Virus record (IMG/VR): IMGVR_UViG_3300038361_000164
Span: 1-64,000 of that record
Reading direction: 5' to 3' (one strand)
DNA length: 64,000 bases
The notes beneath the pieces were generated by a model. That model was not told the origin of the DNA. It made no database searches and was given only the letters and a program-made list of their open reading frames with translations. Both the position numbers and the translations under genes were made by a program. Below, piece by piece: positions 1-42,101 of this stretch (the stretch's first letter is position 1; every line of letters begins with the position of its first letter).

Positions 1-1
1 T

Positions 2-15768: not shown

Positions 15769-15790
15769 AAAAAAAGGACCAAAGGGTCCT
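15769..15790 (-). terminator. Rho-independent terminator downstream of nrdJ
   Basis: Minus strand reads AGGACC-CTTT-GGTCCT followed by a T run. Confidence 0.75.
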
Positions 15791-15800
15791 CGTTCTCTGT

Positions 15801-15832
15801 TGTTCTTATACCAAATTAATTATATTTGGCAA
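15801..15832 (-). promoter_or_regulatory. Putative extended -10 promoter (copy 1)
   Basis: TTGCCA-N16-TATAAG. The 15-mer TTTGGTATAAGAACA is identical to 41197-41211. Confidence 0.5.
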
Positions 15833-18213: not shown

Positions 18214-18504
18214 TTAATCTAATATGGTTATTGTTTTTATATCGTCTGTAGGTATTACTAGTCTTTGAGCAACATCTGCTTTTGACATGAACCCTGCTGG
18301 GAGGGATTGACTAGTTTGTTGTTCTTCTTCTTTTTTTTCATGCTTGTCATCGGGAGGATCAAGTATTATAAATGCATTAGCAACGTATAAAACTACTTTG
18401 CCTTCTCCAAATCTTCCTATTCCCGTCTCATTGGAATCTCGTGTAAAGATCCTAACGTTTTTTCCCATGATATACTTTTCTAGTTTGTTATCATTATCTT
18501 TCAT
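18214..18504 (-). CDS. Hypothetical protein (96 aa), possible Sm/Hfq-like fold
   Basis: Strand pattern VRIFT...GKVV...FIILD...RLVIPTDDIKTI is suggestive only. Confidence 0.5.
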   Translation of the reverse strand: MKDNDNKLEKYIMGKNVRIFTRDSNETGIGRFGEGKVVLYVANAFIILDPPDDKHEKKEEEQQTSQSLPAGFMSKADVAQRLVIPTDDIKTITILD

Positions 18505-18976
18505 TTTTACATATTGATTTAATTTTGTCTATGTCATCTAAATAATTGTCTATGTTTACCAACCACTCGGATTTAAAATCTTTTATTGGAATGGATTTTC
18601 GTGCATCTTCATCATCTGCGTATTTTTTAACTAAGTAAAGAGGTGTTATGAATGCAGAGTTTTTATATAATTCTGTAAAGTGTATAAGAAAGAATCCAAT
18701 TCCTCCAAGCTCCTCTACTATACTTAAATAAATAGTTTGGTGTTGGTGTATATTTTTTAGCGGAAAAGCTGTTTTTATCTTAGTTTCTTTTGCATCAAAT
18801 GCTATAAACTGCCCTCCCTCTATTAAACCAGCGTAGTCAACTGTGGACGACTGTGCGACCAATCCTTTACGTGTTAATAGTATAGGAACGGGCACCTTTA
18901 AAATCAAGGCTTTTTTCTTTTTTCTGTAAGCGTTATTTGCTTTATTTGCACGCTTCTCTAACTCCATTCCTTTCAT
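18494..18976 (-). CDS. recU: Holliday junction resolvase RecU-like
   Basis: GMELEKRAN, STVDYAG, FIAFDAKET, NIHQHQ. Confidence 0.9.
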   Translation of the reverse strand: MKGMELEKRANKANNAYRKKKKALILKVPVPILLTRKGLVAQSSTVDYAGLIEGGQFIAFDAKETKIKTAFPLKNIHQHQTIYLSIVEELGGIGFFLIHFTELYKNSAFITPLYLVKKYADDEDARKSIPIKDFKSEWLVNIDNYLDDIDKIKSICKNER

Positions 18977-18988
18977 AATTAGGTGTGG

Positions 18989-19651
18989 TTATTTTTTAAT
19001 AGCTTCCACGTATAAAGACCTGTACGAGGCATTCGCCTCTGACGAATATGTTCCTTCAAATATAAAATGCTTTGATTGACTTATTTGATATTCCATTTTA
19101 GTAATGTTTGTTTTTTTAAACCCGGCAATTTGTAAATCCTTACATATGGTTTCATAATCCCACGCATTTTGATGGGCTAGCGCCTCTTTACCTAATAAAT
19201 GAGGCTGTCCTGTTGGAGATATAAAATCCTCTCTTAAACATTCAAAGATAGTATAGTCTTTATTATACTTAGTTTTTGCTCGTGCTGTTTCTTGTTTAAA
19301 AAGTTTATAGTTATGGTTTCTGTTAATATATTCTTTAATACTTCTTTCCACATCTGGAATCACTAGTCTTAGTATTCCTTCAGGGTTTAAAACTCTATAA
19401 ATCTCTTTAAATAATAAGGGTGATTTATATATACTAACATGTTCAAAAACATGAGACCCATACACACATTCTATTGAGTTATTTGGAAGAGGTATTTTTG
19501 TAAAATTTTTAAAATCTATTATTATATCTCCAAGTGTTGGGTCTACGTCTACCGTACACCAGGCGCTATCTGGTTTTTTCCAACCCCATCCTGGGCCAAA
19601 ATGTATTTTAGTCCAAATAGGGGGTTCATATTTTCGTTTTTTTAAGTCCAT
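18989..19651 (-). CDS. SAM-dependent methyltransferase (type 11-like)
   Basis: IHFGPG, SIECVYGSHVFEHV, EIYRVLNPEGILRLVIPD. Confidence 0.85.
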   Translation of the reverse strand: MDLKKRKYEPPIWTKIHFGPGWGWKKPDSAWCTVDVDPTLGDIIIDFKNFTKIPLPNNSIECVYGSHVFEHVSIYKSPLLFKEIYRVLNPEGILRLVIPDVERSIKEYINRNHNYKLFKQETARAKTKYNKDYTIFECLREDFISPTGQPHLLGKEALAHQNAWDYETICKDLQIAGFKKTNITKMEYQISQSKHFIFEGTYSSEANASYRSLYVEAIKK

Positions 19652-19662
19652 TTTTATAGTGG

Positions 19663-20436
19663 TTATAAAGCGTTAATACTATTAATTTCTTCTAGTACGT
19701 TTTCCGCAGTATCATCTTTTCAAATTCATTTTTGGTTCTCTGTAGCTATGTGTGGGTGTTCTCCTACACTCATTCCTGTTGTTCTCTTTAATCAACTTGC
19801 AGAACTGATCATAATTCCAGGTGTCGTTATTTTAAATACTCTATATGCAATATCAGGATTCATCATCATTAAAGCTCCACAGCCGTTTGATACTAACCAA
19901 TTCATCTTTGACTTCATATAAAAAGCCATTCTTAGTTCAACATTTATATTATATAAAGAAGGTTTATTTTCTAAATCGTCTATAATAAGATCATTTTTTT
20001 TATTAAATATTTTTCTTCACATTTTTACATTAGAATTTCTTGCTACTTCATACCGCCTTTCTCTAAGAGTGATGAGATTAGTAGTGTTATACACCATATC
20101 TAAAGCTGTTTGTCCAGCAGTTATGTGCTTAAAATTTTTATCAAAATAAACGTCCTTATCGATGGAAACAGTGTTATAGCCCAAACCAATACCCTTAGTT
20201 CCAATACCTACACCGCGGCAATTGGGCATCATCATAGCCAAAGGCATTAAAAGATGAGTTATTCTCCATTCTCAATCGTAATTAGCAGCTTTAGAATGCT
20301 TTTTAATGGAGGTAGTATTAATAGTAATATAAAAAGAATCTTCGTTATTTAATAATCTTTCTTGCTCACATAATGTGAGAAAGATAACAAAATCATAGGT
20401 AATAGGTTGATGCGCTAAATTATAACTAATGATCAT
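19663..20436 (-). CDS. Hypothetical protein in the glycan cluster, 257 aa (5 TGA=Trp)
   Basis: ATG 20436 (overlapping the upstream gene's end) to TAA 19663 is in one frame through 5 TGA and includes ORF 20017..20247. Confidence 0.75.
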
Positions 20437-21115
20437 ACTTATGTCCTTCTAGTCCAAAATTAATGAATGGATTTAATGATAATATGTTGCATCTATATTC
20501 TTCCGTCAATAACAATTTCAATACTTTTGTTGATTTTTCTATTTTAGATAACCAGACTTTGTAATGCTCTTCTTGATCATGTTCACCCCAGGCTATGCTT
20601 ATAGTTTCTTTAGTATGATATCCAGTAAAAAAACTTTCATCATCTAAAGTACCACAGTCGTGCCCGACAAGTATTATGTTCTTAGCACCCATATAAGCTG
20701 CTAAATGCATAGCTGTTGTAAAAGTGGTCCATGAAACTATTAAAGTATCCGATGCTCTTGGCAAAATATGTATTTTAAGTTCATTAAAATTATGGTTAAA
20801 CACAACAACATTATATAAATGATCATAATTATTTTTAATATGGTTTAAATTGATCGAGTTGTTTCCACCGTAACTTCCTTTTGAAATAAAATGTATTACA
20901 TTGGTCAAGGCTTTATCTTGCAGAATTTTATCCAATAATTGTGTTTCTTTTCTTACAAGATAAGTTGGATGTATTTTTTTATACGTTTGATTTACTCCAA
21001 TTAAAGTCTTGTTATTAAAAAAAGAATTGTCAACATAGTCACAGGATTTTCCAGCACCCATAACATAGATATCTTCGTCTTTATGTATATTTTTAAATTC
21101 TTTAAGAGCTCTCAT
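20426..21115 (-). CDS. DUF115/MptE-like (Maf-type) sugar-transfer-associated protein
   Basis: FKNIHKDEDIYVMGAGKS, LIGVN, AMHLAAYMGAKNIILVGHDC. Confidence 0.8.
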   Translation of the reverse strand: MRALKEFKNIHKDEDIYVMGAGKSCDYVDNSFFNNKTLIGVNQTYKKIHPTYLVRKETQLLDKILQDKALTNVIHFISKGSYGGNNSINLNHIKNNYDHLYNVVVFNHNFNELKIHILPRASDTLIVSWTTFTTAMHLAAYMGAKNIILVGHDCGTLDDESFFTGYHTKETISIAWGEHDQEEHYKVWLSKIEKSTKVLKLLLTEEYRCNILSLNPFINFGLEGHKYDH

Positions 21116-22146
21116 TATAGTTTTGTAAGAAATTCCTTTATTCTTTGAGCATCAGATTCAAAATTAACTACTTCGTTAAACTTAGCCTTTACTCTGGCAG
21201 ACCACTCTGGCCAGTGTGCTTCGGCATCGCGAATTTCGTTTACTATTTGTTCTGTGCTTTTACCATGCACATCTATCACAGTCTTTCCTGGAACAAATAA
21301 CATTTCAGGAGTTGAGCCTCGATGATAGGACATATTAACTATGACGGGCTTACCGGCCGCAAAAGCTTGATGTATATTATATCCATAGCCATCTCCCGAA
21401 GGTTTGACATGCCAAAGAAACCCAGTTTCACATAAATTTTGATCTAAGTCATCTGTAGCACCATCACGATTTCCTGCTCCATATATTTTTATATCCCAAT
21501 CAACTAAGCGCTGCTCTATTTCTGCAAGCTTAGGAGCGGTAGGAGAATAGTGTAATAAGTTTATAATACTCTTTGTATTGGTGTTTTCTGTATTGGAAAA
21601 ACGCTCTACTTCAAACTCTTGATGATAATGACACGTATTTGCATTTGGCCAAGTGGAATTACTTTTCTTAGCAGAAGTTAAATAGTTTTTAATTGGGTAA
21701 TTCCAATTGTCATTTCCAGCTTGAAAAATAAATTTGGCATTTGGCATATACTGTGAAATTAGTCGTTGGAAAAGATCTATATGACTGATATGCGAGGCTA
21801 AGACTACATCAAACTTCATTGTTTTAAAAGCTGGAAGTGTTATACCTCTATTAACTCTATTTCTTGGAGAAGTGCAAAAGTAAACTCCTGGAGTATCCGT
21901 AGCAATAGTTTCTGTGTGAACGTATTGTATTTTAGGAAGGGTTTCTCCGTGGATTGTTTTTAAGTTTTCTGTATTGAAATCTAAAAACTGTCTAGCAGTT
22001 CCCTCTGCTGGATATACATTCCAAAAGTTCTCATGCCACCATTCCATTCCTATAGGTCTGTATAATTCCCAACCAAGTCTTTCTTCAAAAAGTAAATGGA
22101 GAGAATGATATAAATCTTCGTGATGTAAGTCTGCTAAAATTTTCAT
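21115..22146 (-). CDS. Glycosyltransferase, GT-B/GT4-like
   Basis: C-terminal LWHVKPSGDGYGYNIHQAFAAGKPVI and LFVPGKT. No TGA. Confidence 0.75.
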   Translation of the reverse strand: MKILADLHHEDLYHSLHLLFEERLGWELYRPIGMEWWHENFWNVYPAEGTARQFLDFNTENLKTIHGETLPKIQYVHTETIATDTPGVYFCTSPRNRVNRGITLPAFKTMKFDVVLASHISHIDLFQRLISQYMPNAKFIFQAGNDNWNYPIKNYLTSAKKSNSTWPNANTCHYHQEFEVERFSNTENTNTKSIINLLHYSPTAPKLAEIEQRLVDWDIKIYGAGNRDGATDDLDQNLCETGFLWHVKPSGDGYGYNIHQAFAAGKPVIVNMSYHRGSTPEMLFVPGKTVIDVHGKSTEQIVNEIRDAEAHWPEWSARVKAKFNEVVNFESDAQRIKEFLTKL

Positions 22147-22148
22147 AA

Positions 22149-22997
22149 TTATCAATTATTGTTGGTTTCGTATCCTAGTTCAATTAATTCGTTGCCTGCG
22201 ATTTCTTTAAAAATATCAATTTGTTGGGGAGTTCAAGATTTTCAACGACTGCCCGCAGAGGCCTTTGCATTTCCAAAAGTACTGTGTTTATCTATATTAA
22301 TTACCTTGCAACTATCAAAGCTGGTAATTTTGGTCTGCACTTCTATTGCTTTTTGTTGCATACGTTTTTTATCCATAGGAATGTTAATAAAATTAAAAAG
22401 ACTTTCCGCAGTTTTATATCCATTTTTAACTCAATCCTCTAAAAACGTTATATTATAATTAGACATTCCTTTTCTACAATCCAAGGCAATTCTAGCTCTG
22501 TTTCTTTGTCCTTTGCAAAAAACTTTGAAATATTCTAAAGTCCTATATTCATGATTTGCTGTTTTTTTCTGAATAATAGATTCTATATGATTTCTAGGGT
22601 CCCGAGTATTAAGTACAAACTCCCAATCTCCGGGCAAAGAATTAAGTTCTGAAACTCCTCATCTAGTTAAAGTTTCTCCGTCGTAGGGATTTGGAACCAA
22701 CGCACTGTTAGTTTCTTCTCCTCACCAGTTTCAAACATAAGTATATCAAAATTGATATTCTAAGTTAGAATTTTGCTTTTCCCCTATTAACTTCAAGTGG
22801 TCGTGCGTTAAGTGCTGAACGGGACAGTGGATAGGAGATTCGGCCAATAAGGTACCTTGTGGCTCATAAATATGCTCATCTCCACGCTTTAAACTTTGTC
22901 TTTTTTTGTCTCATTCTTGAGGCTTTATATCTTGGATATGGTTTCTTACTAAATTAGAGCCACCCCTTATGTACATAAATAATAGTATATTTTTCAT
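22149..22997 (-). CDS. PAPS-dependent sulfotransferase, 282 aa (9 TGA=Trp)
   Basis: 5'-PSB-like YIRGGSNLV, 3'-PB-like LNTRDPRNHIES, FLED(W), and C-terminal R(W)KS(W)TPQQIDIFKEIAGNELIELGY. One frame from ATG 22997 to TAA 22149. Confidence 0.82.
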
Positions 22998-23009
22998 TTT
23001 ATATGTTGA

Positions 23010-23876
23010 TTATGCTGCCCAGTTACTTAAACATGTGTCTTTAGTAAGATCATTTCAAGCAGTTAGAGCTTTGTTTTTTAAATCCTCATCTATAGAATGT
23101 AAGTAAGTTTCTATGTGACTTGGAAATTGACCTGGATATAGTTCTACGTGTTTTAAAAAGAAACCTAACCGAGACAACTCTAAAGCAGAGTCCGTGTCAA
23201 AAGATTCTTTCTTTTCTAATTTGTAATAAAAACTCATTAAGTATCCAACGTGAAATCATCCCTCTTGGAAGTGAGATCATCCTTGTCTATAGTTAGCGCG
23301 ATGTGCGCCAAATTTTGCGTTATTATCCGCTAATCCTTTTATTCATTTTCTGCCATGTGATATTTCATCTGCGGTAAGAGAGTCCCACATTTCTTTCTTA
23401 ATTAATAAAAATGCGTTTTCCCAATGTGGGTTAGGCACAATTCACGGGTATACATTAGAAGGTTCGAATGTTTGATTTAGTACAGGGGCAATAGAACCGG
23501 TAAAAACATAAGATGGTGAGTAATGAGATTCTTGAATATGGTGACAAGAAAAATCATAACCTCCCTCCAAAAAGTCTTTTATAAATACATCTACAGTAGA
23601 AGGATCGCTTATAAAACAATCATTATCTATCATAAGTATTAATTCAAAGTCTCCTTGTAATCGATTTTTAAATCGAACCATTCCTTGGTCATAGGTTAAA
23701 TGCCCACTGTTCCAATATTCAGTATTTGGACCTGTATACGCTCCCCAAGCTTCTCTGCCTGTGTCTTGTATAATTACATTTGTATATCCAGATTTTCAAA
23801 GTCTGGAAATTGTGTCTTCAAAAAAGCTATTTTTTCTGTGATGATTGCTAATAATTAATACTTTAGTTTTATCCAT
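23010..23876 (-). CDS. GT-A/GT2-like glycosyltransferase, 288 aa (6 TGA=Trp)
   Basis: TAATG-coupled start. DxD-like ILMIDNDCF. Joins ORFs 23442..23681 and 23055..23237 in frame. Confidence 0.72.
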
Positions 23877-25027
23877 TATATTCGTACAGATGGTCTTGTT
23901 TTATTAAAAAATCTGGAAGCCTTATCCGCCATTTCAGTGCCAGAAACCAAATCCTGATGTAGATAGGTAGGATGATATTCTCCCGGAATGGGGTGCTTGT
24001 CGTAATAAATATCTATTTCTTTTAAGATATCTCGCCAACCAGCAGAATAATGCTTTCCGCGATAAGGCACCAACTCTCCCTGACCGCACCAAGCTACGGA
24101 AAAGTGGGCTGGCAATGTTTTAGGGTGTCCGTGCCTTTTTCCTAAAGTAGTCATTTTATCATCGGCGAACGCTCGTCCACAAAATTCTTCAGTAAATCCC
24201 TCTGTAGCATTAAACACAGTTCTGGACATAATATGAAATCCATGAAAATTTGGGATAAATTGTATCTTTGAAGATAAAAGACCTTCTACGTGTTGTTGAC
24301 AAAAATCTTTACTTTTATCTAAAAAATTTTCATCATCTAAACTAATCAATTGAGAGGATATGAAATTTGGAATATATACATCACACAAAGCACTTGGATA
24401 TCTTAGATAGTCCCTGACACAATGAACCGAATCATTGCTATAATTAGAGCCTCCTTTCCCGTCTTTTACTTCTTGCATATGTTCTAAGAGCCAATCTTTT
24501 TCTTGATTAGTAACTCTGGCAAATATGGCATGAGGAGAGCAATAATAATTATCTCCTCAAATTTTAACATACTCTTCAAGTTCTTTTAAGCTAAATAGAT
24601 ACAAAAAGTCCCCAGGAGTAATAATCAAAGTATCTCCGCTAGAAGCTTCCACTGCTAAATTATATAACAATCCAGAACTCATTCATAAAAAAGATCTAGA
24701 TATATCATATAAAGTCCCGTTTTTAAACTTTTCAACATTTTCTTTTAGCCCGTTTCTAAATTCTTCTTCGAAGATATTTTTTGTATCATAATGCACCATT
24801 AAACGATCTAAGTAGTCGGTAGTATCTTTAAAAGTTCTTGTAACTACTTTTAGGTTAGGTATCTCTATCTCTAGGTTTTTAAAGTGCTCGGCAGAGCCAT
24901 CTTCAACACGATCGTCGTGAGCTAAAACAATTTCAAACTCAACACCTTGGTTATGTTTTAATAAAGCTCGAATAAACATTTCAGTGTCTCATTTAGAATT
25001 GAGAGCACAACAGCATATACTTATCAT
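23876..25027 (-). CDS. GT-A/GT2-like glycosyltransferase, 383 aa (3 TGA=Trp)
   Basis: MISICCC, FEIVLAHDD..EDGS, YNLAVEASSGDTLIITPGD, GFTEEF...FADD. Joins ORFs 24683..24979 and 23876..24478. Confidence 0.78.
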
Positions 25028-25029
25028 TT

Positions 25030-26166
25030 TTATTGATGGTTAGAAAATAATTTTCGTAAAGTATTATAAATACGTTCTCTAAACTCTCCCACTACCCAAA
25101 ATCCGCTAGGAATGAATACAGGATGAATTTTAGAGTGTATTTGACATGTTCCGTTTGGAAAGCAATTGTGGATAGTATTATCAGGCCACATCGGAGTAGT
25201 TTGTATGTTAGCATCCTTAAACACTTGATTACATTTATCTATATTAATATTTGTGTTATTTAAAACAAATCCAAAAGTTCACCAACTTGGATTCGATTCC
25301 ACATCGGTTATTATTTGGTATTCACTAGGAATAACTGTTTTAAACAATGTAACATTTTCTCTAGAAACAGCTATAGATTGTTTAGCTAATTTTAGATTAG
25401 CAAGGCCTATACTTGCAGCAATGTCGTTCATATGAAACTTATATCCAGCTTCCTGTATAGAAGACGTCATTTGATGCTCCAACCGATCCATTCCTTTTGG
25501 AACTTTTCGATCTATACCAAATCATTTCAGCTTAATAGCTCGTTGATAATTATTTTCACAATTAATTGCAAGAGCTCCGCCGTCTCCGGTAGTAAGATGT
25601 TTAATTGATTGAAAAGAGAAACAAACATAATCCCCTCAATGTGAAATATGTTTATTTTTATAAAGAGTATCTACTCCGTGAGCAGCGTCAAGTATAAGAG
25701 GTATGTTTTTCTTTTTGCAGATTTTTACTAACTCATTCAATCTAAAAGGCACTACTCCACCTACCAAAACTAACATAACAATATTAAAAGTTTGTTTGTT
25801 AGCTTTTAAAGTCTTGATAATCTCATCACAGTCTAAACACAGAGTAGTATTGGATACTTTCCCTCAAATCACAGAATTACCTGTATTTGTTATAGCACAA
25901 TTGGTAGCAACCATGGTAAAAGGAGTTGTGAGTACGGAATTTTGCGAGGAGGACATAGCAAGTTTTAAGGCCATCATTAAGGAGCTTGTACATGAATTTG
26001 TACAAACAACTTTATCATGCTTAAATCAAGTATTTAATGCTTTTGTAAATTTTACAACTTTAGGACCTTCTCCTATCATTCCCGAATCTAACACATTTCC
26101 TACTTCATTTTTTGCTGTAGTAGACATTGCTACTTTAAACATTGGTATTGTGTTTGTGCTAGACAT
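25030..26166 (-). CDS. DegT/DnrJ/EryC1/StrS PLP-dependent sugar aminotransferase, 378 aa (5 TGA=Trp)
   Basis: SGMIGEGPKV, NSCTSSL, ILDAAHG, (W)GDYVCFSFQSIKHLTTGDGG with the PLP Lys, LK(W)FGIDR, GYKFHMNDIAASIG. Confidence 0.93.
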
Positions 26167-26744
26167 TATAACTCCTTTCTTGTGCACAAAGTTACAGCGT
26201 TGTGATTATTAGCCTCTACAACTGTATAATCTCAACAAGTATTAAACCATTTTTCTTTGAATATTATATTTCAGGGTTTATATTTATATTTTTTTTGCCA
26301 CTTATTGTGGATGCCGCCTTCTAAAATAAAGGCTTTATTTGAACTATTATCAAATAATTTTATGAGAGAAGGTAAATTATTATAATGATTGCAAACATCT
26401 ATATGAACTAATCCCAGATCTTCGGTTATAAGTTCTTTAAGTTTGTTTTCCGTTCCTTTGACTACTGCTCATTCACAAACTAAATTTGCTTTTTCTAAAT
26501 TAGAAATAGTTATTTTAAAATTGGCGTGTGTTTTTGCGTAAGGAGGCTCTATATATTCAGATTCAAAAGAATCTATAGTTATAATCTTACTTTTAGCTGC
26601 TAGTGCTTTCCCTATGAGAATAGCACTAGCACCCTGTTGTGTACCGATTTCAATTACTAATTTAGGATTAGTATTTTTGACAAAATCAATGATTTTAGTT
26701 TGTAAATGTGAGTTGGAATATGACGTGGTAAATACAGTAGACAT
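26166..26744 (-). CDS. Class I SAM-dependent methyltransferase, 192 aa (3 TGA=Trp)
   Basis: VIEIGTQQGASAI, ITIDSF, VHID. TAATG overlaps at both ends. Confidence 0.82.
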
Positions 26745-27166
26745 TAAAAGTCCTCCCGTAATTCTACCCAATTGTTCTCAAAGTCTTGTATAAATATATT
26801 AAACCAACCTTTTGGATTTTTATACTTATGTACTATGACATAAGCTGGTAAAACTTTTAAAAATTCCTCTCTACTACCCTTAGCACCTGTATGAAGACAA
26901 ACGTGATTTATGCCTTGTCTGTTGAATTGCCAAGTTCCGACATTTCCAGAGCCTTTGTGAAATTGATGAATTTCTATGTCAGGTGTGTCCGTGTCAGTGA
27001 GGGTATATCTGTGTATGGTTGCAACGTCATCTATATTAAACAAAGCTTTAGAAATTGTAGAATCAAGTTCGCTTTCCCAGATACAGGTATATCCTACAAT
27101 TTTACACCAAAATTCTTCAAATAAAAGTATGTTGTTTGTTATCCAACCAATGTGATCTATGTGCAT
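26744..27166 (-). CDS. VOC/glyoxalase superfamily protein
   Basis: IDHIGW, IEIHQF, GINHVCLH, FIQDFENNWVEL. Confidence 0.85.
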   Translation of the reverse strand: MHIDHIGWITNNILLFEEFWCKIVGYTCIWESELDSTISKALFNIDDVATIHRYTLTDTDTPDIEIHQFHKGSGNVGTWQFNRQGINHVCLHTGAKGSREEFLKVLPAYVIVHKYKNPKGWFNIFIQDFENNWVELREDF

Positions 27167-27178
27167 AATTTATTGCTC

Positions 27179-27844
27179 CTAGTTGTTTATCCATAAGGTT
27201 TGCTGTCCATCCAATAATAGCGTCCAACCGTGGTCAAAAAGCCACTCCCTAGCTAAACGAGGTTTTCCGCCCCCGGCTAAGTTGTTGTCATCTATTAATA
27301 TAACGGACTGATCTGTTAATTTATCGATTGCTGCTTCCAACTCCTTCAAACAATGTTCTTGACAAGGGTTAATAATATCACTATGAAATTGAACAATATT
27401 GTCATCAGAAAGAACGCAATCGAATCCACCAGGAAGATCTTCCATAGGATAATCAAAACTATCTAAATATAATAAATCTATTTGATGTTCGCAATTGTTT
27501 AAATATTCTACTGAGTCCATAAAAACATATTCTACATAATCATATTGCTTTGTAAATCTTTTTACTCGATTTAAATGCTCCTGAACATTATCAACTGTAA
27601 TTAACTTTCCACCTAATAGATTGATAGTTTCGGCAAAAAGAGCAGTAGACATGCCACCACCCCAATCATTTTCCTCACGCTGACATCCGGTTTCTACTAT
27701 TAGCTTCCCATTGCGTTGATAAAATAAGTTTAAAGCAGCTTTCATAGTAGGATACCTACCATCAAGCTGATTGTATTTATTAAAAAAATCTGTGTTTCTA
27801 ACGTATAAAAACTTTTTTATAGCGTCTGTAAGTACGTTTTCCAT
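27179..27844 (-). CDS. SAM-dependent methyltransferase (Methyltransf_24-like)
   Basis: IVETGC, LITVD, DSVEYL, IDLLYLDS, ILIDDN. Confidence 0.85.
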   Translation of the reverse strand: MENVLTDAIKKFLYVRNTDFFNKYNQLDGRYPTMKAALNLFYQRNGKLIVETGCQREENDWGGGMSTALFAETINLLGGKLITVDNVQEHLNRVKRFTKQYDYVEYVFMDSVEYLNNCEHQIDLLYLDSFDYPMEDLPGGFDCVLSDDNIVQFHSDIINPCQEHCLKELEAAIDKLTDQSVILIDDNNLAGGGKPRLAREWLFDHGWTLLLDGQQTLWINN

Positions 27845-28842
27845 TGTGTTTGTATGGTTTCTTGTCCAAAATATTGTAAAGCAGTAGCTCTACCATTTGC
27901 TCCTATTTCTCTAGCTAAGTCTATATCATTTAAAAGCAAGTCACAATATTTTCGTAATTGATCCACATCGTCGCTAATAAATCCGTTAATACTGTTTCGT
28001 ATAATTGTATCTATTTCATACAATCCACTAACTCCTAGGTATTGAGCATTTCCATGCACAGGTCCCAAAGCTATAACTGGAATCCCGGTCATTAAAGCTT
28101 CAATAAAGTTTAAAGTATAGCTCGCAGGATGTGTGCCTGTATAAAAATAAGCTCTATTATTTCTCATTTCAGCTTTTAATTGCTCAAAGGAAACTTTACC
28201 AGGAGAGAATTCTAAATGCTCATTTCCAGGTCCAAACAATATTCTTGGTACACTTTTAGTAACTTCATCATAAATAGGAAAATTACAATGAGGTGTACGC
28301 TGTTGCATTGATTGATTAAAAGTAACAATTCTTTTATTTTTACCATTCCAGTTTTTATATTCTTCTGGATCTTTGTAAAAACGAATTAGTGCATCACCTC
28401 CTAAGTATCCAGGAATATTCATTTCGTTTGGAGAATACCTTACGATTTTTAATCCCTGCTCTCTAAAAGGTCTAAGCTCTGCTTCAGTGTTAGTAATAGA
28501 TTGTCCTATGGTTCTCCATATCACAACTTTATGCTTCATAGCTTCCCAGTTTCCTGAAATCCATCTAGGAATGTGCATTACAATAACACAATCAAACATA
28601 TCTACAAATTCTTTAGTTAATCTATCTTTCCCATCTACCGCTCCTTGACAAAGCGTATGATACATGTCTAAATGCTTTTGCTCATACTCAATGTTTAAAA
28701 GTCCGGGACGTAAAGTAGCGTCTCCAGGATTTTTTGGCTCTACATACGCGCCAGGAGAAAAGACATAATGTCCCATCCCAGTTAAAAGTTTTACTTCGTC
28801 ATACTCTAGAATACTGTGACAACTTAAATATAATATTTTCAT
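27817..28842 (-). CDS. GT4-like glycosyltransferase
   Basis: NFIEALMTGIPVI and IRNSINGFISDD. Confidence 0.85.
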   Translation of the reverse strand: MKILYLSCHSILEYDEVKLLTGMGHYVFSPGAYVEPKNPGDATLRPGLLNIEYEQKHLDMYHTLCQGAVDGKDRLTKEFVDMFDCVIVMHIPRWISGNWEAMKHKVVIWRTIGQSITNTEAELRPFREQGLKIVRYSPNEMNIPGYLGGDALIRFYKDPEEYKNWNGKNKRIVTFNQSMQQRTPHCNFPIYDEVTKSVPRILFGPGNEHLEFSPGKVSFEQLKAEMRNNRAYFYTGTHPASYTLNFIEALMTGIPVIALGPVHGNAQYLGVSGLYEIDTIIRNSINGFISDDVDQLRKYCDLLLNDIDLAREIGANGRATALQYFGQETIQTQWKTYLQTL

Positions 28843-29813
28843 TACGACTGTAACCTCGCTAGATCGGAGTCTACCATTTTTATTACAAGTTCTTTAAAAC
28901 TAACTTTAGGAGACCATCCAAGTTCCTGTCTTGCAAAAGCAGAATCGCCTCTTAAAACATTTACTTCTGCAGGACGCATAAATCTTGGATCTTGTTTTAT
29001 ACAATGACGCCAGGTTTCATACCCAATGTGTGTAAACGCGACATCTAAGAAATCTTTAATTGAGTGGGATTTTCCAGTAGCTATTACAAAATCTGTAGGC
29101 TCCTTTTGCTGTAACATCGCCCACATTGCTTTTACATATTCAGGTGCATATCCCCAATCACGTCTAGCTTCAAGATTGCCTAAAGTTATGTGATTTTGAA
29201 TACCCAATCTTATCTTTGCAACACCGTCTGATATTTTTCTAGTAACAAATTCTAATCCACGTCTTTCTGATTCGTGATTAAATAAAATGCCACAACAGTT
29301 ATACATTCCATACGATTCTCTATAATTTACTGTAATATGATGACCGTAAAGTTTAGAAACCCCATAAGGCGATCTTGGACTAAAGGGAGTAGTTTCATCC
29401 ATTAACTCTGTTGTTTGGTTTCCAAACATTTCTGATGAGCTAGCTTGGTAAAACTTTATTTTTTTATTGGTATCAAACTCTCTAATCGCTTCCAACATTC
29501 TTAACACACCTAATCCTGTAACATCACTTGTCTGTTCTGGAGTGTTCCAGCTTTCACCAACAAAAGATTGAGAGGCTAAGTTGTATATTTCGTCGGGATC
29601 GCATACCTTTAAAGCTCTTAGGAGTGAATTTTGGTCTGTCAAATCACCTTGTATAAAAGTAATTTTTTCTTCCAAATGTGCGGTATTTGTTCTATTTTTT
29701 GTGGAAGCTCTACGTTCTAAACCAAAAACTTCATAATTTTTGGTTAATAAAAAATCAGCTAAATGGCTTCCATCCATTCCATTTATGCCTGTAATTAAAG
29801 CACGTTTACTCAT
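28842..29813 (-). CDS. gmd: GDP-mannose 4,6-dehydratase
   Basis: ALITGINGMDGSHLA, GDLTD, EIYNLASQS, FYQASSSEMFG, SPYGVSKL, NHESERRG, RDWGYA. Confidence 0.95.
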   Translation of the reverse strand: MSKRALITGINGMDGSHLADFLLTKNYEVFGLERRASTKNRTNTAHLEEKITFIQGDLTDQNSLLRALKVCDPDEIYNLASQSFVGESWNTPEQTSDVTGLGVLRMLEAIREFDTNKKIKFYQASSSEMFGNQTTELMDETTPFSPRSPYGVSKLYGHHITVNYRESYGMYNCCGILFNHESERRGLEFVTRKISDGVAKIRLGIQNHITLGNLEARRDWGYAPEYVKAMWAMLQQKEPTDFVIATGKSHSIKDFLDVAFTHIGYETWRHCIKQDPRFMRPAEVNVLRGDSAFARQELGWSPKVSFKELVIKMVDSDLARLQS

Positions 29814-31428
29814 TCGTATTGTTGGTTAAGGCTACCCATTGTTCTTTAATGGAATCAATGTGTACTTGTTGTTTAATAATTTCTTTGCCCAATAAAGCTT
29901 GAGCCTTATAATAAGCATAATTTTCTTTTAATTCAAGCAATTGTTTAGCTGCATGTGCCACATCCGGTTCGTACTGTTCTCCAACTTTAATTTCTCTCGT
30001 AATATTGCCAGAGTATCTAGCTGTCGAAGCTTCATGGCTGTTAACCCATAAAATACCTGGAACATCTATTAAATCAAGATGTGCTGTGTTTCTACTCAAT
30101 ATTACAGGTATTCCGCAAAGCAAAGCTTGTCTTGGTGTGACACTATATCCTTCCCCTGCGGAGATAAATATATAAGCACTTAAATTTTTCCACCAAGCTA
30201 AATAGTCTTCAAAAATGAGAGTTTCATTTTGAAAACTAATATTTTTTGAATCTAGAGCAAGTATGCTTTCTAAATGTTCTACCATTTCTGGAGTGTTAAC
30301 AAAATCCCTGGAGTGTATAGCAAGAAAATCATTTTCGCTTTTCATTACATTAAAGCTCTCAATAATTTTATCTACTTTTTTACGTTCCCATAGTCCGCCA
30401 GAATAACCAAAAGTTATTTTGTCCGTAGGTGGGTTATTTTCTAAAATTGAATAGTGTGCTATGTGCTCTAACTTGTCGATAGTGGCTTTTGGATATTCTT
30501 TTTGTAAATGTTCATGTAGCCAACTATTAGTTATAACTGTATGGTCGAACATTTCAATCAATGGTTGCAATAAATCAACTCCAGTACTTTCCCACATAAG
30601 GTAAAAATAGGATTCTATGTTATATTTGTTTTTTAAATCTTCAAGCACACGTCTTGTATGCGTAAATATGTTTTCTGCAATGTCTATGCCGGAAACATGT
30701 ATAAATTTAGCATTTTTGTATTTCTCAGGATTTTCTGCATGTGCATTTTCTAAAGTCAAATATAACTTTAACCATTCAAAATCTTTGATATGTCTGTTTA
30801 AATTCTCTTGGGAAAAATCATCTATAGTTTGTAGAAATCTGAAATGCTGTCCAATACGATCATATGCTCTGTAAAATGACACGTTTTTAAAATTACGAAA
30901 AACGTTATCATATAAATTAAACATATGTGCTCCCAGACCATCTTCTCTTAAATAAAAACCATACATAATAATTGGAGTATCCAACCCGTCCTTAACAGGC
31001 AATAGGTGGTCGATATTAATATTTTTAATATGTTCCATTATATCCAATTCACAGGTTTTAACTTCAAATCCTTTTATCTTTAGTTGTTCAAATTTAGAGG
31101 GAGTTTCTTCAAGTGCAGCCATTAATCCTTGAGGTTTTACCAAATCTTTAGGATATCTTGGGGAAATAACGGCATGGACAATTCCATGAAATTGTGTTTC
31201 TTCGTATAAAGAAGTCACAGTTGTAAATTCTAGTTCAGTTTTATTAGCTGATAAAAAAATTTCTGTGGTTATGGGGGAAATAATGCGGTTGCCCCAAACT
31301 AATGTTAGAGTAGTGTTTATATCGTATGGAGTGTTATATGTGACCCTTACTTTATATATGCCGCTTGAGTTAACGTTTTTAACGTCGTGTAGTGTAACAA
31401 TTTTTTGTTGTGGGGTTTCTCTTATCAT
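29806..31428 (-). CDS. GT4-like glycosyltransferase with N-terminal extension (540 aa)
   Basis: FGYSGGLWERKKVD and FISAGEGYSVTPRQALLCGIPVILS. Confidence 0.8.
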   Translation of the reverse strand: MIRETPQQKIVTLHDVKNVNSSGIYKVRVTYNTPYDINTTLTLVWGNRIISPITTEIFLSANKTELEFTTVTSLYEETQFHGIVHAVISPRYPKDLVKPQGLMAALEETPSKFEQLKIKGFEVKTCELDIMEHIKNINIDHLLPVKDGLDTPIIMYGFYLREDGLGAHMFNLYDNVFRNFKNVSFYRAYDRIGQHFRFLQTIDDFSQENLNRHIKDFEWLKLYLTLENAHAENPEKYKNAKFIHVSGIDIAENIFTHTRRVLEDLKNKYNIESYFYLMWESTGVDLLQPLIEMFDHTVITNSWLHEHLQKEYPKATIDKLEHIAHYSILENNPPTDKITFGYSGGLWERKKVDKIIESFNVMKSENDFLAIHSRDFVNTPEMVEHLESILALDSKNISFQNETLIFEDYLAWWKNLSAYIFISAGEGYSVTPRQALLCGIPVILSRNTAHLDLIDVPGILWVNSHEASTARYSGNITREIKVGEQYEPDVAHAAKQLLELKENYAYYKAQALLGKEIIKQQVHIDSIKEQWVALTNNTNE

Positions 31429-31449
31429 AATAAATTAATGTTTAAAGTT

Positions 31450-31474
31450 AGAGGAGAGCACAAGGCTCCCCTCT
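31450..31474 (-). terminator. Hairpin (possible terminator) between the replication block and the glycan cluster
   Basis: Minus strand AGAGGGGAGC-cttgt-GCTCTCCTCT, a 10-bp stem with one G.U pair. The U tail is weak. Confidence 0.55.
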
Positions 31475-31489
31475 TAACGTGTTTAAATA

Positions 31490-31954
31490 TTATTCAAACA
31501 ATGCTTGTTTGCCTCCAGACGCAACTTGCGTCTCGCCAACATCAGCACCACCGCTAGCACCACCTTCTATAGCTTTCCATTTCGCTATTGAAGTTTGTGG
31601 TTTGCCGTTAGTTCCTTTCGCTGTTTCTGCCCATGCTGAAACTGTTTTGCCCTTTATGTCCTTAGCAATCATCTCTGGAGTTACGTCTTCGCTGTTTATT
31701 AACTCGCTTCCGCAAGCGCTTAAAAACGAAACTAAAAATCCCGCTGATGCATCCGTCATAACAAAGTTATTCCAGATCTTTCGACCGGAAAACTTACCTG
31801 ATATAATATCAAAGGTTGTGGCAACCATTACATTACCGGTAGATGCTGTTTTGATTTTTGTTTCGCTAACTTTTAATTCGTAACGAGCATCTGGAATAGG
31901 CGCGTATTCGCCTGTTTTCATATTTGCTTTCTTATCTTTTAAGTTTAAACCCAT
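31490..31954 (-). CDS. DUF669-type ssDNA-binding protein
   Basis: YAPIPDARY, GKFSGRKIWNNF, flexible Gly/acidic tail. Adjacent to the AAA_24 gene. Confidence 0.8.
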   Translation of the reverse strand: MGLNLKDKKANMKTGEYAPIPDARYELKVSETKIKTASTGNVMVATTFDIISGKFSGRKIWNNFVMTDASAGFLVSFLSACGSELINSEDVTPEMIAKDIKGKTVSAWAETAKGTNGKPQTSIAKWKAIEGGASGGADVGETQVASGGKQALFE

Positions 31955-41176: not shown

Positions 41177-41196
41177 ATTAAGTCTGGTTATTCTAA

Positions 41197-41228
41197 TGTT
41201 CTTATACCAAAATATATAAATATTGCTA
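41197..41228 (-). promoter_or_regulatory. Putative extended -10 promoter for the leftward (early) block (copy 2)
   Basis: TAGCAA-N16-TATAAG with the same 15-mer and spacing as 15801-15832. Confidence 0.55.
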
Positions 41229-41234
41229 TTGAAC

Positions 41235-41262
41235 TTGTCTCCGAAAAAAGCTATATTATAAC
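41235..41262 (+). promoter_or_regulatory. Putative sigma70-type promoter for the rightward tail block
   Basis: TTGTCT-N16-TATAAC in the divergent gap. SD AAGGA before ATG 41296. Confidence 0.4.
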
Positions 41263-41295
41263 ATAACTATTTTATTAATTAACCAAGGAATTTTA

Positions 41296-41742
41296 ATGGA
41301 AAAACGAATAGAAGAAATCTTAGAAGAAGTATTCAACACAGGAGTGGCTACAAAAACCTTTGATTTAATACCGGATAAGCTATCCGTCACTGTAGTTACG
41401 ATTAACTCAGAGGATCAGCTTGCTCTTGAAAAGGCGATACCCGAAGAAACGGGCGGTCAATGGTATATGATTCATAAATACAGCCGTAACATGTTGAAAT
41501 ACACTGTTAAAAAGTACGGGACAAAAACATTTGGAACTGCTGACGCGGCTGAAGACTTTCTTAAAACCCTTTCTGGAAGTATATTAGACAGGCTTATAAA
41601 AGAACAAAGTGCTTTAGAAAAAGAATTACGAACAGCTCTAGGTTTGGAGAATGTAGAAGAACATTTTTTCGTAAAGGACGAACTCGAAACAGGCTCAGAG
41701 CAATCGTCCAAGGAGTCCAACTCGGCGAACCCGGAAGCCTAA
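41296..41742 (+). CDS. Tail assembly chaperone (G)
   Basis: Position upstream of the tape measure gene; contains a slippery heptamer near its 3' end. Confidence 0.75.
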   Translation: MEKRIEEILEEVFNTGVATKTFDLIPDKLSVTVVTINSEDQLALEKAIPEETGGQWYMIHKYSRNMLKYTVKKYGTKTFGTADAAEDFLKTLSGSILDRLIKEQSALEKELRTALGLENVEEHFFVKDELETGSEQSSKESNSANPEA

Positions 41743-42101
41743 GAGAAGCAGTTTTATTAAGATATTCTGAAGAAGAAAATAATGCCAGATATTTAGAAAC
41801 GTTAATAAATCTTTTTGGGATCATGTCCCAGAGAGGGGAAGAACCTGATACTGAATATTTAGAAAAGTTATTAGAACAGTATCAAACAATAATGTTAGGA
41901 AAATCTGAATCCAAAACAGATAAAATAGAATCTAAAAAGGAATCTGCTGATGCAAATCTTTTAACTGATTTTAAAGGTTTTCAAGAGAATATTAAAGGTA
42001 AGACCTTTTCCTTTAAAAAACTAAAAGATACTGTAGGGAAAAAAGAATTTGATTCCACAGATATTCGAAAACTATCAGAAAAGTATTTAGGAGATAAATA
42101 A
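41296..42101 (+). CDS. Tail assembly chaperone G-T fusion via -1 frameshift at T TTT TTC (41664-41670)
   Basis: The -1 frame is open from the heptamer to TAA 42101, with no ATG until 41823. Confidence 0.75.

What the first reader, a model, noticed from the sequence alone, without database searches (positions are those of the whole stretch)
18989..31428. Gene-by-gene code mosaic inside one glycan operon
In a tightly coupled 14-gene run, six genes are TGA-rich (19663-20436: 5; 22149-22997: 9; 23010-23876: 6; 23876-25027: 3; 25030-26166: 5; 26166-26744: 3). The eight interleaved or flanking genes have none, including Trp-rich 21115-22146 and 29806-31428. Either one transcript gives two enzyme sets, with Gmd and three GT4-like enzymes made at any time and the aminotransferase, sulfotransferase and GT2s made only after the code switch, or the TGA-free genes are recent imports from standard-code donors.
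Basis: partly seen in the sequence, partly recalled or inferred. Interest (0 to 1): 0.72.

Follow-up and report, generated by a model that had tools for sequence, protein, structure and literature searches.

The report
Half-recoded sugar operon in marine phage
In a 210-kb marine phage that reads TGA as stop in some genes and as tryptophan in others, one tightly packed sugar-modification operon alternates gene by gene between the two readings, so a single gene cluster probably gives two enzyme sets depending on the cell's decoding state.

Summary
Six of 14 abutting minus-strand genes hold 31 in-frame TGA against 17 TGG. The other eight hold 0 TGA against 47 TGG (Fisher p = 6e-13). TGA is tryptophan: it aligns with invariant Trp in DegT homologues and with TGG in standard-code relatives.

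The window belongs to a roughly complete 210-kb marine jumbo phage. It also uses TGA as a real stop in early genes, shown by ATGA stop/start overlaps. The 14 genes form a glycan island in a variable slot between a family-conserved GT4 glycosyltransferase and recU, inside the replication-gene unit.

The "recent import" reading is not supported. The stretch 21115-28842 matches collinear glycan modules in standard-code phage contigs, which carry no in-frame TGA. Both gene classes are equally diverged from those modules, both have the same composition, and none has a near-identical donor. GT and Gmd stay TGA-free in a second recoded relative.

Selection therefore keeps eight genes readable in both codes. 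Six decorating enzymes (methyltransferase, aminotransferase, two GT2-like, sulfotransferase-like, one unknown) need TGA=Trp. Timing, single-transcript status and the switch mechanism are inferred only. No tRNA(UCA), release factor or TrpRS was found. The phage's own unusual tRNA-Trp(CCA) is a lead. I rate it a fine-grained variant of known phage stop-codon recoding.

The parts
29806..31428 (-). GT4-type glycosyltransferase of 540 aa: an N-terminal beta domain plus a GT-B fold. It anchors the island and is conserved at this position in all relatives. 0 TGA / 9 TGG.
   Evidence: Pfam Glyco_trans_1_4. Homologues at 37-46% identity sit in the same synteny. Model and PDB fold hits are to GT4 enzymes.
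28842..29813 (-). GDP-mannose 4,6-dehydratase (Gmd). 0 TGA / 5 TGG.
   Evidence: Pfam GDP_Man_Dehyd, 414.6 bits. It is 65-66% identical to the gene right after the GT in recoded relative G005, which is also TGA-free.
27817..28842 (-). GT4 glycosyltransferase, a core phage glycan gene. 0 TGA / 5 TGG.
   Evidence: Weak Pfam Glycos_transf_1 hit. Homologues occur in 67 viral or metagenome loci, all without in-frame TGA.
27179..27844 (-). Methyltransferase (Methyltransf_24). 0 TGA / 4 TGG.
   Evidence: Pfam. Homologues lie next to the GT4 in 16 loci.
26744..27166 (-). Glyoxalase/VOC-like protein of 140 aa. 0 TGA / 6 TGG. In contig L032 it is fused to the next methyltransferase.
   Evidence: Weak Pfam Glyoxalase_4 hit. 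It is 51% identical to the N-terminal half of the 327-aa ORF L032:7015-7998.
26166..26744 (-). Methyltransferase (Methyltransf_24). 3 TGA / 2 TGG. First TGA-bearing gene. The code class changes exactly at its TAATG junction with the gene before it.
   Evidence: Pfam. Two of its 3 TGAs align with W in the L032 fusion protein.
25030..26166 (-). DegT/DnrJ/EryC1-family sugar aminotransferase. 5 TGA / 3 TGG.
   Evidence: Pfam 189.9 bits. PDB relatives are 4xau, 4zwv and 4zas (CalS13). Four of the 5 TGAs align with W that is invariant or dominant in 21 homologues.
23876..25027 (-). GT2-like glycosyltransferase (lead only). 3 TGA / 3 TGG.
   Evidence: No Pfam or NCBIfam hit. Atlas feature hits are to phage GT2 clusters. 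It is 42-46% identical to ORFs in L032 and L036.
23010..23876 (-). GT2-like glycosyltransferase (lead only). 6 TGA / 5 TGG.
   Evidence: Atlas feature and structure hits are to GT2 clusters, TM 0.5-0.58. It is 43-44% identical to ORFs in L032 and L036.
22149..22997 (-). Sulfotransferase-like protein (lead only). 9 TGA / 2 TGG. Its last codon is a TGA that aligns with W, followed by TAA.
   Evidence: Atlas feature hits are to sulfotransferase clusters, 0.96-0.97. The word-index search found no homologue. It is 32-37% identical to ORFs in L031, L034 and L037.
21115..22146 (-). GT4-like GT-B glycosyltransferase. 0 TGA / 10 TGG. It partners the 27817 GT4 in 54 of 67 loci.
   Evidence: 506 homologues, the best 47% identical. 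Model pLDDT 92. Fold hits are MshA, PimA, BshA, PglA and SdgB.
20426..21115 (-). MptE-like / sialyltransferase-like protein. 0 TGA / 3 TGG. A 31%-identical paralogue at genome 82480-83193 (+) carries 3 TGA.
   Evidence: Weak Pfam MptE-like hit. PHROG 4603. Paralogue.
19663..20436 (-). Protein of unknown function, 257 aa. 5 TGA / 2 TGG.
   Evidence: Open only under TGA=sense. No family hit in Pfam, NCBIfam or PHROGs.
18989..19651 (-). Methyltransferase (Methyltransf_11). 0 TGA / 5 TGG. Last gene of the island.
   Evidence: Pfam. PHROG methyltransferase.
31490..31954 (-). DUF669 protein, the conserved upstream flank of the island (replication module).
   Evidence: Pfam. The same neighbour is present in all relatives.
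18494..18976 (-). RecU Holliday-junction resolvase, the conserved downstream flank. In several relatives it follows the GT directly or after one small gene.
   Evidence: Pfam RecU 115.6 bits. Synteny.
15774..15791 (-). Terminator-like hairpin plus T-run after the ribonucleotide reductase gene (15820-17802). It is the only convincing minus-strand terminator downstream of the island.
   Evidence: RNR assignment from Pfam.

Best explanation
The window is the first 64 kb of a nearly complete 210-kb marine jumbo phage that uses TGA in two ways. TGA is a stop in a set of early genes and tryptophan in about 45 other genes. The 14-gene run is a sugar-modification island. It sits in a variable slot between a family-conserved GT4 glycosyltransferase and recU, inside the replication-gene transcription unit.

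Selection keeps eight of its genes free of TGA, so they can be read under either code. These are three GT4-type transferases, Gmd, two methyltransferases, a VOC-like protein and an MptE-like protein. Six genes carry TGA at the same share of Trp codons as the tail genes. These are a methyltransferase, the DegT aminotransferase, two GT2-like proteins, a sulfotransferase-like protein and one unknown. They give full-length protein only while the infected cell reads TGA as Trp.

The cluster therefore most likely yields the core enzymes at any time and the decorating enzymes only in the recoded state, which is presumably later in infection.

Shown: TGA = Trp; TGA is also a stop; the partition exists and is not chance; both classes belong to collinear modules seen TGA-free in standard-code phages.

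Inferred: that the state is temporal; that one mRNA carries all 14 genes; and that the phage's own variant tRNA-Trp(CCA) does the decoding.
For: 1. TGA = Trp. It aligns with invariant or dominant W at 4 of 5 DegT sites. It aligns with W at 6 of 7 baseplate sites in standard-code relatives, which have no in-frame stops. Two paralogous collagen-like repeat units show TGG and TGA at the same Trp.

2. TGA is also a stop. At 11500, 90366, 168742 and 169865 the next gene's ATG overlaps the TGA as ATGA, and a backup TAA or TAG follows 2-8 codons later. In recoded relative G005 the GT gene ends in a TGA that overlaps the Gmd start, while its baseplate gene holds 9 in-frame TGAs.

3. TGA use is bimodal per gene. 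Of 77 genes with at least 4 Trp codons, 41 have no TGA and 34 have a TGA share of at least 0.2. A two-class mixture fits far better than a single rate (logL -123 against -205).

4. The TGA share is 0.65 in the six operon genes and 0.61 in late genes, against 0 of 47 in the other eight.

5. Shared origin of both classes. Homologues of the genes in 23010-28842, all without in-frame TGA, lie clustered in L032, L036 and L093, and L093 also carries the 21115 homologue, in nearly the same order as here. Identities are 48-51% for the TGA-free genes and 43-47% for the TGA-bearing genes. The VOC-like gene (6 TGG, 0 TGA) and the methyltransferase (2 TGG, 3 TGA) form a single ORF in L032.

6. GT and Gmd are old residents and are TGA-free in two recoded lineages.

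7. There is no room for internal promoters or terminators. The first good minus-strand terminator lies after RNR. Metatranscriptome contigs at 100% identity cross the class boundaries at 22146/22149 and at 26744.
Against: - There are no time-resolved data. The RNA-library contigs are 151-243 nt long, could be DNA carry-over, and cannot prove a single transcript.
- No tRNA(UCA), release factor or TrpRS was found, so how and when TGA becomes Trp is unknown.
- Under the standard code, ribosomes would stop early in five consecutive genes. That would leave about 4.6 kb of untranslated mRNA upstream of TGA-free genes, recU and RNR. This is a polarity problem for a simple early-transcript model.
- 'TGA = late' is not clean genome-wide. 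A DNA ligase has 5 TGAs, while head-region genes and a 1506-aa glycosyltransferase have none.
- No second recoded phage with this module was found, so the pattern has no replicate.
Confidence: 0.58

Rival explanations
1. Dose rather than timing. TGA is decoded throughout infection, but inefficiently, by a near-cognate tRNA-Trp(CCA) competing with host RF2. Each TGA then lowers protein output. TGA accumulates in genes where little protein is wanted or tolerated (the accessory decorating enzymes) and is purged from genes that need robust expression (the core transferases, Gmd).
For: The only tRNA-Trp is CCA, with C9 and an A31-C39 mismatch; no tRNA(UCA) was found. Changes of this kind raise UGA read-through only partly (PMC13092985, read). 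The TGA-free island genes are the widely conserved core (67, 54 and 16 loci), and the TGA-bearing ones are rarer accessories (2-5 loci). Head-region genes lack TGA, while a ligase has it.
Against: Nine TGAs in one 282-codon gene would abolish output unless read-through is near complete. Large structural proteins also carry many TGAs: terminase 14, tail fibre 14, baseplate 7. TGA-free status also covers dozens of small early genes that are unlikely all to be highly expressed.
Confidence: 0.2
2. Acquisition history. The island was assembled from pieces with different pasts. The TGA-bearing block came from, or was exchanged with, a code-4 phage. The TGA-free genes came more recently from standard-code donors. 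On this view the mosaic has no regulatory meaning.
For: The slot between GT and recU is a cargo hot spot. Relatives carry nothing, a small gene, or quite different glycan gene sets there. Five of the six TGA genes are contiguous. Three island genes (18989, 19663, 20426) have no homologue in any fetched locus.
Against: Both classes lie in collinear modules also found in standard-code phages, and show equal divergence from them. GC, GC3 and non-Trp codon usage do not separate the classes. No protein above 49% identity exists for DegT, nor above 47% for 21115, and the 90% clusters hold only this phage. GT and Gmd are ancestral yet TGA-free. If they drifted at the late-gene rate, 0 of 14 would have a probability of about 2e-6. 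Whatever their origin, the six genes can still only be read as code 4.
Confidence: 0.12
3. The host itself reads TGA as Trp, so the distribution of TGA is drift or chance.
For: No phage-encoded TGA-decoding machinery was recognised.
Against: Early genes in this phage and in G005 have TGA stops with ATGA overlaps. Across TGA-free genes of at least 180 aa there are 274 TGG and 0 TGA. Most relatives in the family use the standard code. The permutation test excludes chance.
Confidence: 0.03

Closest known systems
Stop-codon-recoded phages of gut microbiomes (crAss-like, Lak, Agate, Jade; Borges et al., bioRxiv 10.1101/2021.08.26.457843, read)
   Same: TGA is reassigned to Trp. In-frame TGA is concentrated in structural genes and absent from replication genes. 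Close relatives use the standard code. The proposed role is to hold back translation of some genes until the code changes. Only 35% of such code-4 genomes have a detectable tRNA(UCA).
   Different: This phage is marine. The partition runs gene by gene inside one tightly packed operon of metabolic (glycan) genes, and that operon lies in the replication unit rather than at a structural or lysis block. No tRNA(UCA), RF1 or TrpRS is present.
Multi-code 'block' genomes of crAss-like phages (Mgcod, bioRxiv 10.1101/2022.06.29.495998; abstract seen)
   Same: One genome is divided into parts read with the standard code and parts read with a reassigned stop.
   Different: Outside the island, this genome also shows large blocks. 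Inside the island the blocks shrink to 1-5 genes with 0-12 nt between them, and one boundary falls between two genes that form a single ORF in another phage.
UGA decoding by near-cognate tRNA-Trp(CCA) with a weakened anticodon stem or A9C/G24A changes (Blastocrithidia, Ca. Zinderia, E. coli tests; PMC13092985, read)
   Same: The phage's only tRNA-Trp has anticodon CCA, C at position 9 and a 4-bp anticodon stem. Standard-code relative G001 has A9 and a regular 5-bp stem.
   Different: Here the unpaired pair is at the bottom of the stem (31-39), a class that paper set aside. Function was not tested here.
4-amino-4,6-dideoxyhexose pathways, such as GDP-perosamine made by Gmd plus a DegT-family aminotransferase, and phage or giant-virus glycan islands (own knowledge, not tested)
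   Same: A 4,6-dehydratase, a DegT-family aminotransferase, methyltransferases and several glycosyltransferases sit in one cluster.
   Different: The substrate, product and acceptor are unknown. The dehydratase and the aminotransferase, which would be consecutive steps, fall into different code classes.

Membership tests
Code-4 (TGA to Trp) recoded phage with dual TGA use | In-frame TGA in conserved genes aligns with Trp in homologues | tested here: met
   DegT: 4 of 5 TGAs fall on invariant or dominant W. Baseplate: 6 of 7 fall on W in standard-code relatives. Module genes compared with L032 and L031.
Code-4 (TGA to Trp) recoded phage with dual TGA use | Reading TGA as sense restores long ORFs and raises coding density | tested here: met
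   Density rises from 0.836 to 0.92 and mean ORF length from 559 to 715 nt. The six island genes are fragmented under table 11.
Code-4 (TGA to Trp) recoded phage with dual TGA use | Recoded codon enriched in structural/late genes and absent from replication/early genes | tested here: met
   Tail, baseplate and terminase genes are TGA-rich. RNR, RecU, AAA_24, the RNAP-like gene and the tRNA-region genes are TGA-free. Exceptions: a DNA ligase has 5 TGAs and head-region genes have none.
Code-4 (TGA to Trp) recoded phage with dual TGA use | TGA still serves as a stop in the standard-code part | tested here: met
   There are four ATGA stop/start overlaps and about 8 further near-terminal TGAs. The same is seen in relative G005.
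Code-4 (TGA to Trp) recoded phage with dual TGA use | Phage-encoded tRNA(UCA) suppressor, RF1 or TrpRS (frequent, but not universal) | tested here: not met
   ARAGORN and Rfam find 26-28 tRNAs, none with anticodon UCA. PF00472 and PF00579 are absent in a genome that CheckV rates 99% complete.
Code-4 (TGA to Trp) recoded phage with dual TGA use | Host uses the standard code | not testable with these tools
   The host is unknown and the samples are seawater. Indirect support comes from TGA stops in early genes and from standard-code relatives.
   There are no intergenic gaps over 12 nt and no minus-strand terminator before 15.8 kb. Short RNA-library contigs cross two class boundaries but cannot show one transcript.
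   This needs infection time courses (ribosome profiling or proteomics) in a cultured host.
Blastocrithidia-like 4-bp-anticodon-stem tRNA-Trp(CCA) | 4-bp stem unpaired at the top (27-43), 7-nt loop, no A9C or G24A | tested here: not met
   Here the mismatch is A31-C39 at the bottom of the stem, and position 9 is C. It resembles the class functionally but is not a member as that paper defines it.
GDP-sugar 4-amino-4,6-dideoxyhexose pathway | Gmd plus a DegT-family 4-aminotransferase in one cluster | tested here: met
   Gmd 414.6 bits, DegT 189.9 bits. The nearest solved structures are sugar aminotransferases. Nucleotide-sugar specificity was not tested.

The most novel reading that the evidence does not exclude
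A phage uses in-frame TGA as a per-gene translational gate inside one polycistronic mRNA. A core glycan (GT4 enzymes, Gmd) can be made from the start of infection. Its amino, methyl, sulfate and extra-sugar decorations are added only once a phage-made near-cognate tRNA-Trp(CCA), with C9 and a 4-bp anticodon stem, has shifted the cell to reading TGA as Trp. The untranslated TGA block may also act as a code-dependent polarity barrier for the genes downstream of it.
Probability: 0.25. Interest if true: 0.82.

Novelty: new variant of a known kind. Interest (0 to 1): 0.62.

Why it matters
Stop-codon recoding in phages is thought to delay late proteins, but the published evidence is at the scale of genome blocks, where transcription timing and code are confounded. 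Here, adjacent genes 0-12 nt apart differ in code, and they belong to gene modules that are uniformly standard-coded in other phages. The code itself is therefore the only visible difference between neighbours.

That makes this a natural test case for whether recoding regulates translation gene by gene. It would also extend the phenomenon to marine jumbo phages and to auxiliary sugar metabolism. It points as well to a possible suppressor-free route to TGA decoding, through a variant tRNA-Trp(CCA).

Tried and rejected
- Megablast of the operon and tblastn of two TGA-bearing proteins against 50,697 GenBank phages gave no match. Gmd gave only hits at or below 52% identity.
- The word-index search with the sulfotransferase-like protein found nothing. 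Pfam and NCBIfam at loose thresholds gave only noise for five proteins. This included a 14-bit PMT_C3 hit (E = 0.034) for 19663-20436, which I do not interpret.
- Sigma-70-like promoter hits in the region are at chance level (73 found against 77.5 expected).
- A TTGAC-N17-TATATTAAA promoter type seen before several plus-strand genes is absent from the minus strand of the window. No late-promoter motif could be defined.
- The base after sense TGA differs only weakly from that after TGG (p = 0.02).
- This phage and G005 share three TGA positions in the baseplate gene, which is what chance predicts, so a shared origin of the recoding could not be dated.
- Extra tRNA-like hits at 110-112 kb are not UCA suppressors.
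- The genome search cannot draw relatives for a virus record, and loci from the look-up of encoding contigs are not held as records.
- A scan of IMG/VR with the GT4 alignment gave 70 loci, all standard code, so no second recoded copy of the module was available.
- No complex prediction was run, because no binding claim is made.

Full report
**What the sequence is.** The window is bases 1-64000 of a single 210,263-bp contig with 35.9% G+C. CheckV rates it 99% complete. Both contig ends lie inside one collagen-like repeat gene, so the assembly broke in a repeat of an otherwise closed genome. It carries 26 tRNA genes and a tmRNA, tail, baseplate and terminase genes, and an RNA-polymerase-like giant gene. 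It is identical to contigs in at least nine seawater metagenomes. It is a marine jumbo phage with no near relative among 50,697 GenBank phage records.

**Checking the observation.** Under table 4, the minus strand from 31428 to 18989 holds 14 ORFs that overlap or lie at most 12 nt apart. Under table 11, six of them fall apart. In total there are 31 TGA and 17 TGG in the six genes, and 0 TGA and 47 TGG in the other eight. Fisher's exact test gives p = 5.8e-13. None of 200,000 permutations put all the TGAs into six or fewer genes.

**What TGA means here.**
- In the DegT aminotransferase, four of five TGAs align with Trp that is invariant or dominant in 21 homologues.
- In the baseplate gene, six of seven TGAs align with Trp in relatives that have no in-frame stops.
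- Two paralogous repeat units of the collagen-like gene show TGG and TGA at the same Trp.
- So TGA is Trp, not Gly.
- TGA is also a real stop. In four early genes the TGA overlaps the next gene's ATG as ATGA. About eight more early genes have one TGA 2-8 codons before the next TAA or TAG.
- TGA use is bimodal per gene. Of 77 genes with at least four Trp codons, 41 have no TGA, two lie between 0 and 0.2, and 34 are at 0.2 or above. A two-class mixture fits far better than one rate.
- The TGA share of Trp codons is 0.61 in late genes and 0.65 in the six island genes.

**The setting of the island.** Homologues of the first gene, the 540-aa GT4-type transferase, identify a family of roughly 200-kb phages with one backbone: helicase, PolyA_pol/HD, Holliday endonuclease, Lactamase_B, exonuclease, AAA_24, DUF669, GT, then recU, dUTPase, RNR, and further on a sigma factor and PolA. 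Between GT and recU the relatives differ:
- Some carry nothing or one small gene (L010, L014, L015).
- Others carry different large glycan gene sets (L012, L016).
- One carries GT-Gmd plus one more gene (G005/L020).

The slot is therefore a cargo hot spot inside the replication unit. Four relatives use the standard code: their baseplate homologues have no in-frame stops, and TGA stops are used in their replication-region loci. G005 is recoded like this phage. It has 9 in-frame TGAs in its baseplate gene, yet its GT ends in a TGA that overlaps the Gmd start codon.

**Gene functions.**

| Class | Gene | Assignment |
|---|---|---|
| TGA-free | 29806-31428 | GT4-type transferase (GT-B fold) |
| TGA-free | 28842-29813 | Gmd, 414 bits |
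| TGA-free | 27817-28842 | GT4 |
| TGA-free | 27179-27844 | methyltransferase |
| TGA-free | 26744-27166 | VOC-like protein |
| TGA-free | 21115-22146 | GT-B/GT4 fold, model pLDDT 92 |
| TGA-free | 20426-21115 | MptE-like / sialyltransferase-like |
| TGA-free | 18989-19651 | methyltransferase |
| TGA-bearing | 26166-26744 | methyltransferase |
| TGA-bearing | 25030-26166 | DegT aminotransferase |
| TGA-bearing | 23876-25027, 23010-23876 | GT2-like (leads only) |
| TGA-bearing | 22149-22997 | sulfotransferase-like (lead only) |
| TGA-bearing | 19663-20436 | unknown |

**History or selection?** This is the key question, and the fetched contexts answer most of it.
- A standard-code metagenome contig, L032, carries a methyltransferase, GT4, a fused VOC-methyltransferase ORF, DegT, and two GT2-like genes. 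These are homologous to 27179 through 23010.
- IMG/VR contigs L036 and L093 carry the same set. L093 runs on to a homologue of 21115, almost collinear with this phage.
- None of these homologues, nor any homologue in 70 further viral loci, has an in-frame TGA.
- Identity to L032 is 48-51% for the TGA-free genes and 43-47% for the TGA-bearing ones. Both classes are therefore about equally old here.
- The class boundary falls exactly between the VOC-like gene (6 TGG, 0 TGA) and the methyltransferase (2 TGG, 3 TGA). These two are a single ORF in L032.
- GC, GC3 and codon usage outside Trp do not separate the classes.
- No protein is more than 49% identical to DegT, or more than 47% identical to 21115. 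The 90%-identity clusters of all eight TGA-free proteins hold only this phage's own contigs.
- GT and Gmd are syntenic and TGA-free in both recoded lineages. If they drifted at the late-gene rate, 0 of 14 would have a probability near 2e-6.

The reverse idea, that the TGA block is a separate import, is unparsimonious.

**Most likely working.** Selection keeps eight genes readable under both codes and lets six be readable only as code 4. Because the genes abut, and the first convincing minus-strand terminator lies after RNR at 15774-15791, they are probably co-transcribed with recU and RNR. Metatranscriptome contigs identical to the phage lie inside TGA-bearing genes and cross two class boundaries. 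They are short and could be DNA carry-over. The cluster would then give the core enzymes at any time and the decorating enzymes only in the recoded state.

The core enzymes are the GT4 pair, which co-occurs in 54 of 67 loci, plus Gmd. The decorating enzymes are the rarer accessory families, found in only 2-5 loci.

Elsewhere in this genome the two classes are segregated in large blocks. Of 43 tightly packed informative gene pairs, only four switch class, and all four are in this island. That is what makes the island unusual.

**Weak points.**
- Timing is not shown.
- Under the standard code, five consecutive genes would be translated only for the first 12-91 codons. That leaves about 4.6 kb of bare mRNA upstream of TGA-free genes, recU and RNR, which raises a polarity problem.
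- A ligase has TGAs and head-region genes have none. A model based on dose rather than timing therefore remains a serious rival.
- No tRNA(UCA), release factor or TrpRS is present.
- The phage's only tRNA-Trp has anticodon CCA, C at position 9 and an A31-C39 mismatch that leaves four stem pairs. The standard-code relative G001 has A9 and five pairs. A9C and 4-bp-stem tRNA-Trp(CCA) are reported to raise UGA read-through (PMC13092985). That study did not examine the bottom-unpaired type, so this is a lead only.

**Comparison with what is known.** Recoding of TGA to Trp in phages is described in Borges et al.. [quoted passage not shown] Block-wise use of two codes in one genome is described for crAss-like phages. 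The present case is a member of that kind of system. It differs in grain (single genes in one tight operon), in content (auxiliary sugar metabolism inside the replication unit), in habitat (marine) and in lacking a cognate suppressor. I rate it a new variant of a known kind.

**What the glycan does is unknown.** The Ser/Thr-rich collagen-like fibre genes, which are themselves TGA-bearing late genes, are a plausible acceptor. That is inference only.

Noticed in passing
genome 109296-109371 (-), locus L004:5296-5371: The only tRNA-Trp has anticodon CCA, C at position 9 and an A31-C39 mismatch, giving a 4-bp anticodon stem. The tRNA-Trp of standard-code relative G001 has A9 and a regular 5-bp stem. 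This is a possible suppressor-free TGA decoder.
   Followed up: partly
genome 115365-115439 (-), locus L004:11365-11439: A well-formed tRNA with anticodon CUA (amber suppressor) is present, although TAG ends about 50 genes and no gene needs TAG read as sense. TAG-ending genes have a closer backup stop than TAA-ending genes (median 7 against 11 codons; 24 of 51 against 62 of 209 within 5 codons). Relative G001 has no such tRNA.
   Followed up: partly
genome 110100-111700 (-), locus L004:6100-7700: A cluster of tRNA-like and Y-RNA-like (YrlA) modules scores below the Rfam gathering threshold. It also holds an odd tRNA-like element with a UCU anticodon loop at 110130-110210. ARAGORN lists none of them.
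   Followed up: partly
window 1-1192 and genome 208217-210263 (+): Both contig ends lie in one collagen-like gene made of Gly-X-Ser/Thr repeats with repeated globular units. The assembly broke in this repeat. TGG and TGA alternate at the same Trp in paralogous units.
   Followed up: partly
window 18977-31489 compared with loci L010, L012, L014, L015, L016, L020: The interval between the conserved GT and recU is a cargo hot spot. It holds 0 to more than 12 genes with unrelated glycan gene sets in different relatives. The RNR gene of relative L010 carries two inteins, which are absent here.
   Followed up: yes
genome 82480-83193 (+), locus L002:18480-19193: This is a paralogue (31% identity) of the TGA-free MptE-like island gene 20426-21115. 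It sits after the tail-gene block and carries 3 TGAs, so one family is present in both code classes within one genome.
   Followed up: partly
genome 200957-205477 (+): A 1506-aa protein with a glycosyltransferase domain has 32 TGG and no TGA. The gene 12 nt upstream of it uses TGA for both of its Trp codons.
   Followed up: partly
genome 92296-99360 (+), locus L003:8296-15360: A 2354-aa RNA-polymerase-beta-like protein has a single TGA, at codon 794. That codon lies in a stretch that matches a thymidylate-synthase PHROG, so it may be an inserted element.
   Followed up: no
genome 180387-181706 (+): An ATP-dependent DNA ligase carries 5 in-frame TGAs, while the neighbouring helicase carries none. 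This is an exception to 'replication genes are TGA-free'.
   Followed up: no
genome 84662-85255 and 165961-166173: One segment has 56% G+C. A short stretch is crowded with TGA triplets in one frame. Both were called as ORFs only by my crude ORF picker and are probably non-coding or repeat elements.
   Followed up: no
window 41177-42100: This is the divergent region between the minus-strand replication block and the plus-strand tail block. A minus-strand ORF with 2 TGAs (41594-42118) overlaps the start of the first tail gene. The promoters there were not resolved.
   Followed up: no
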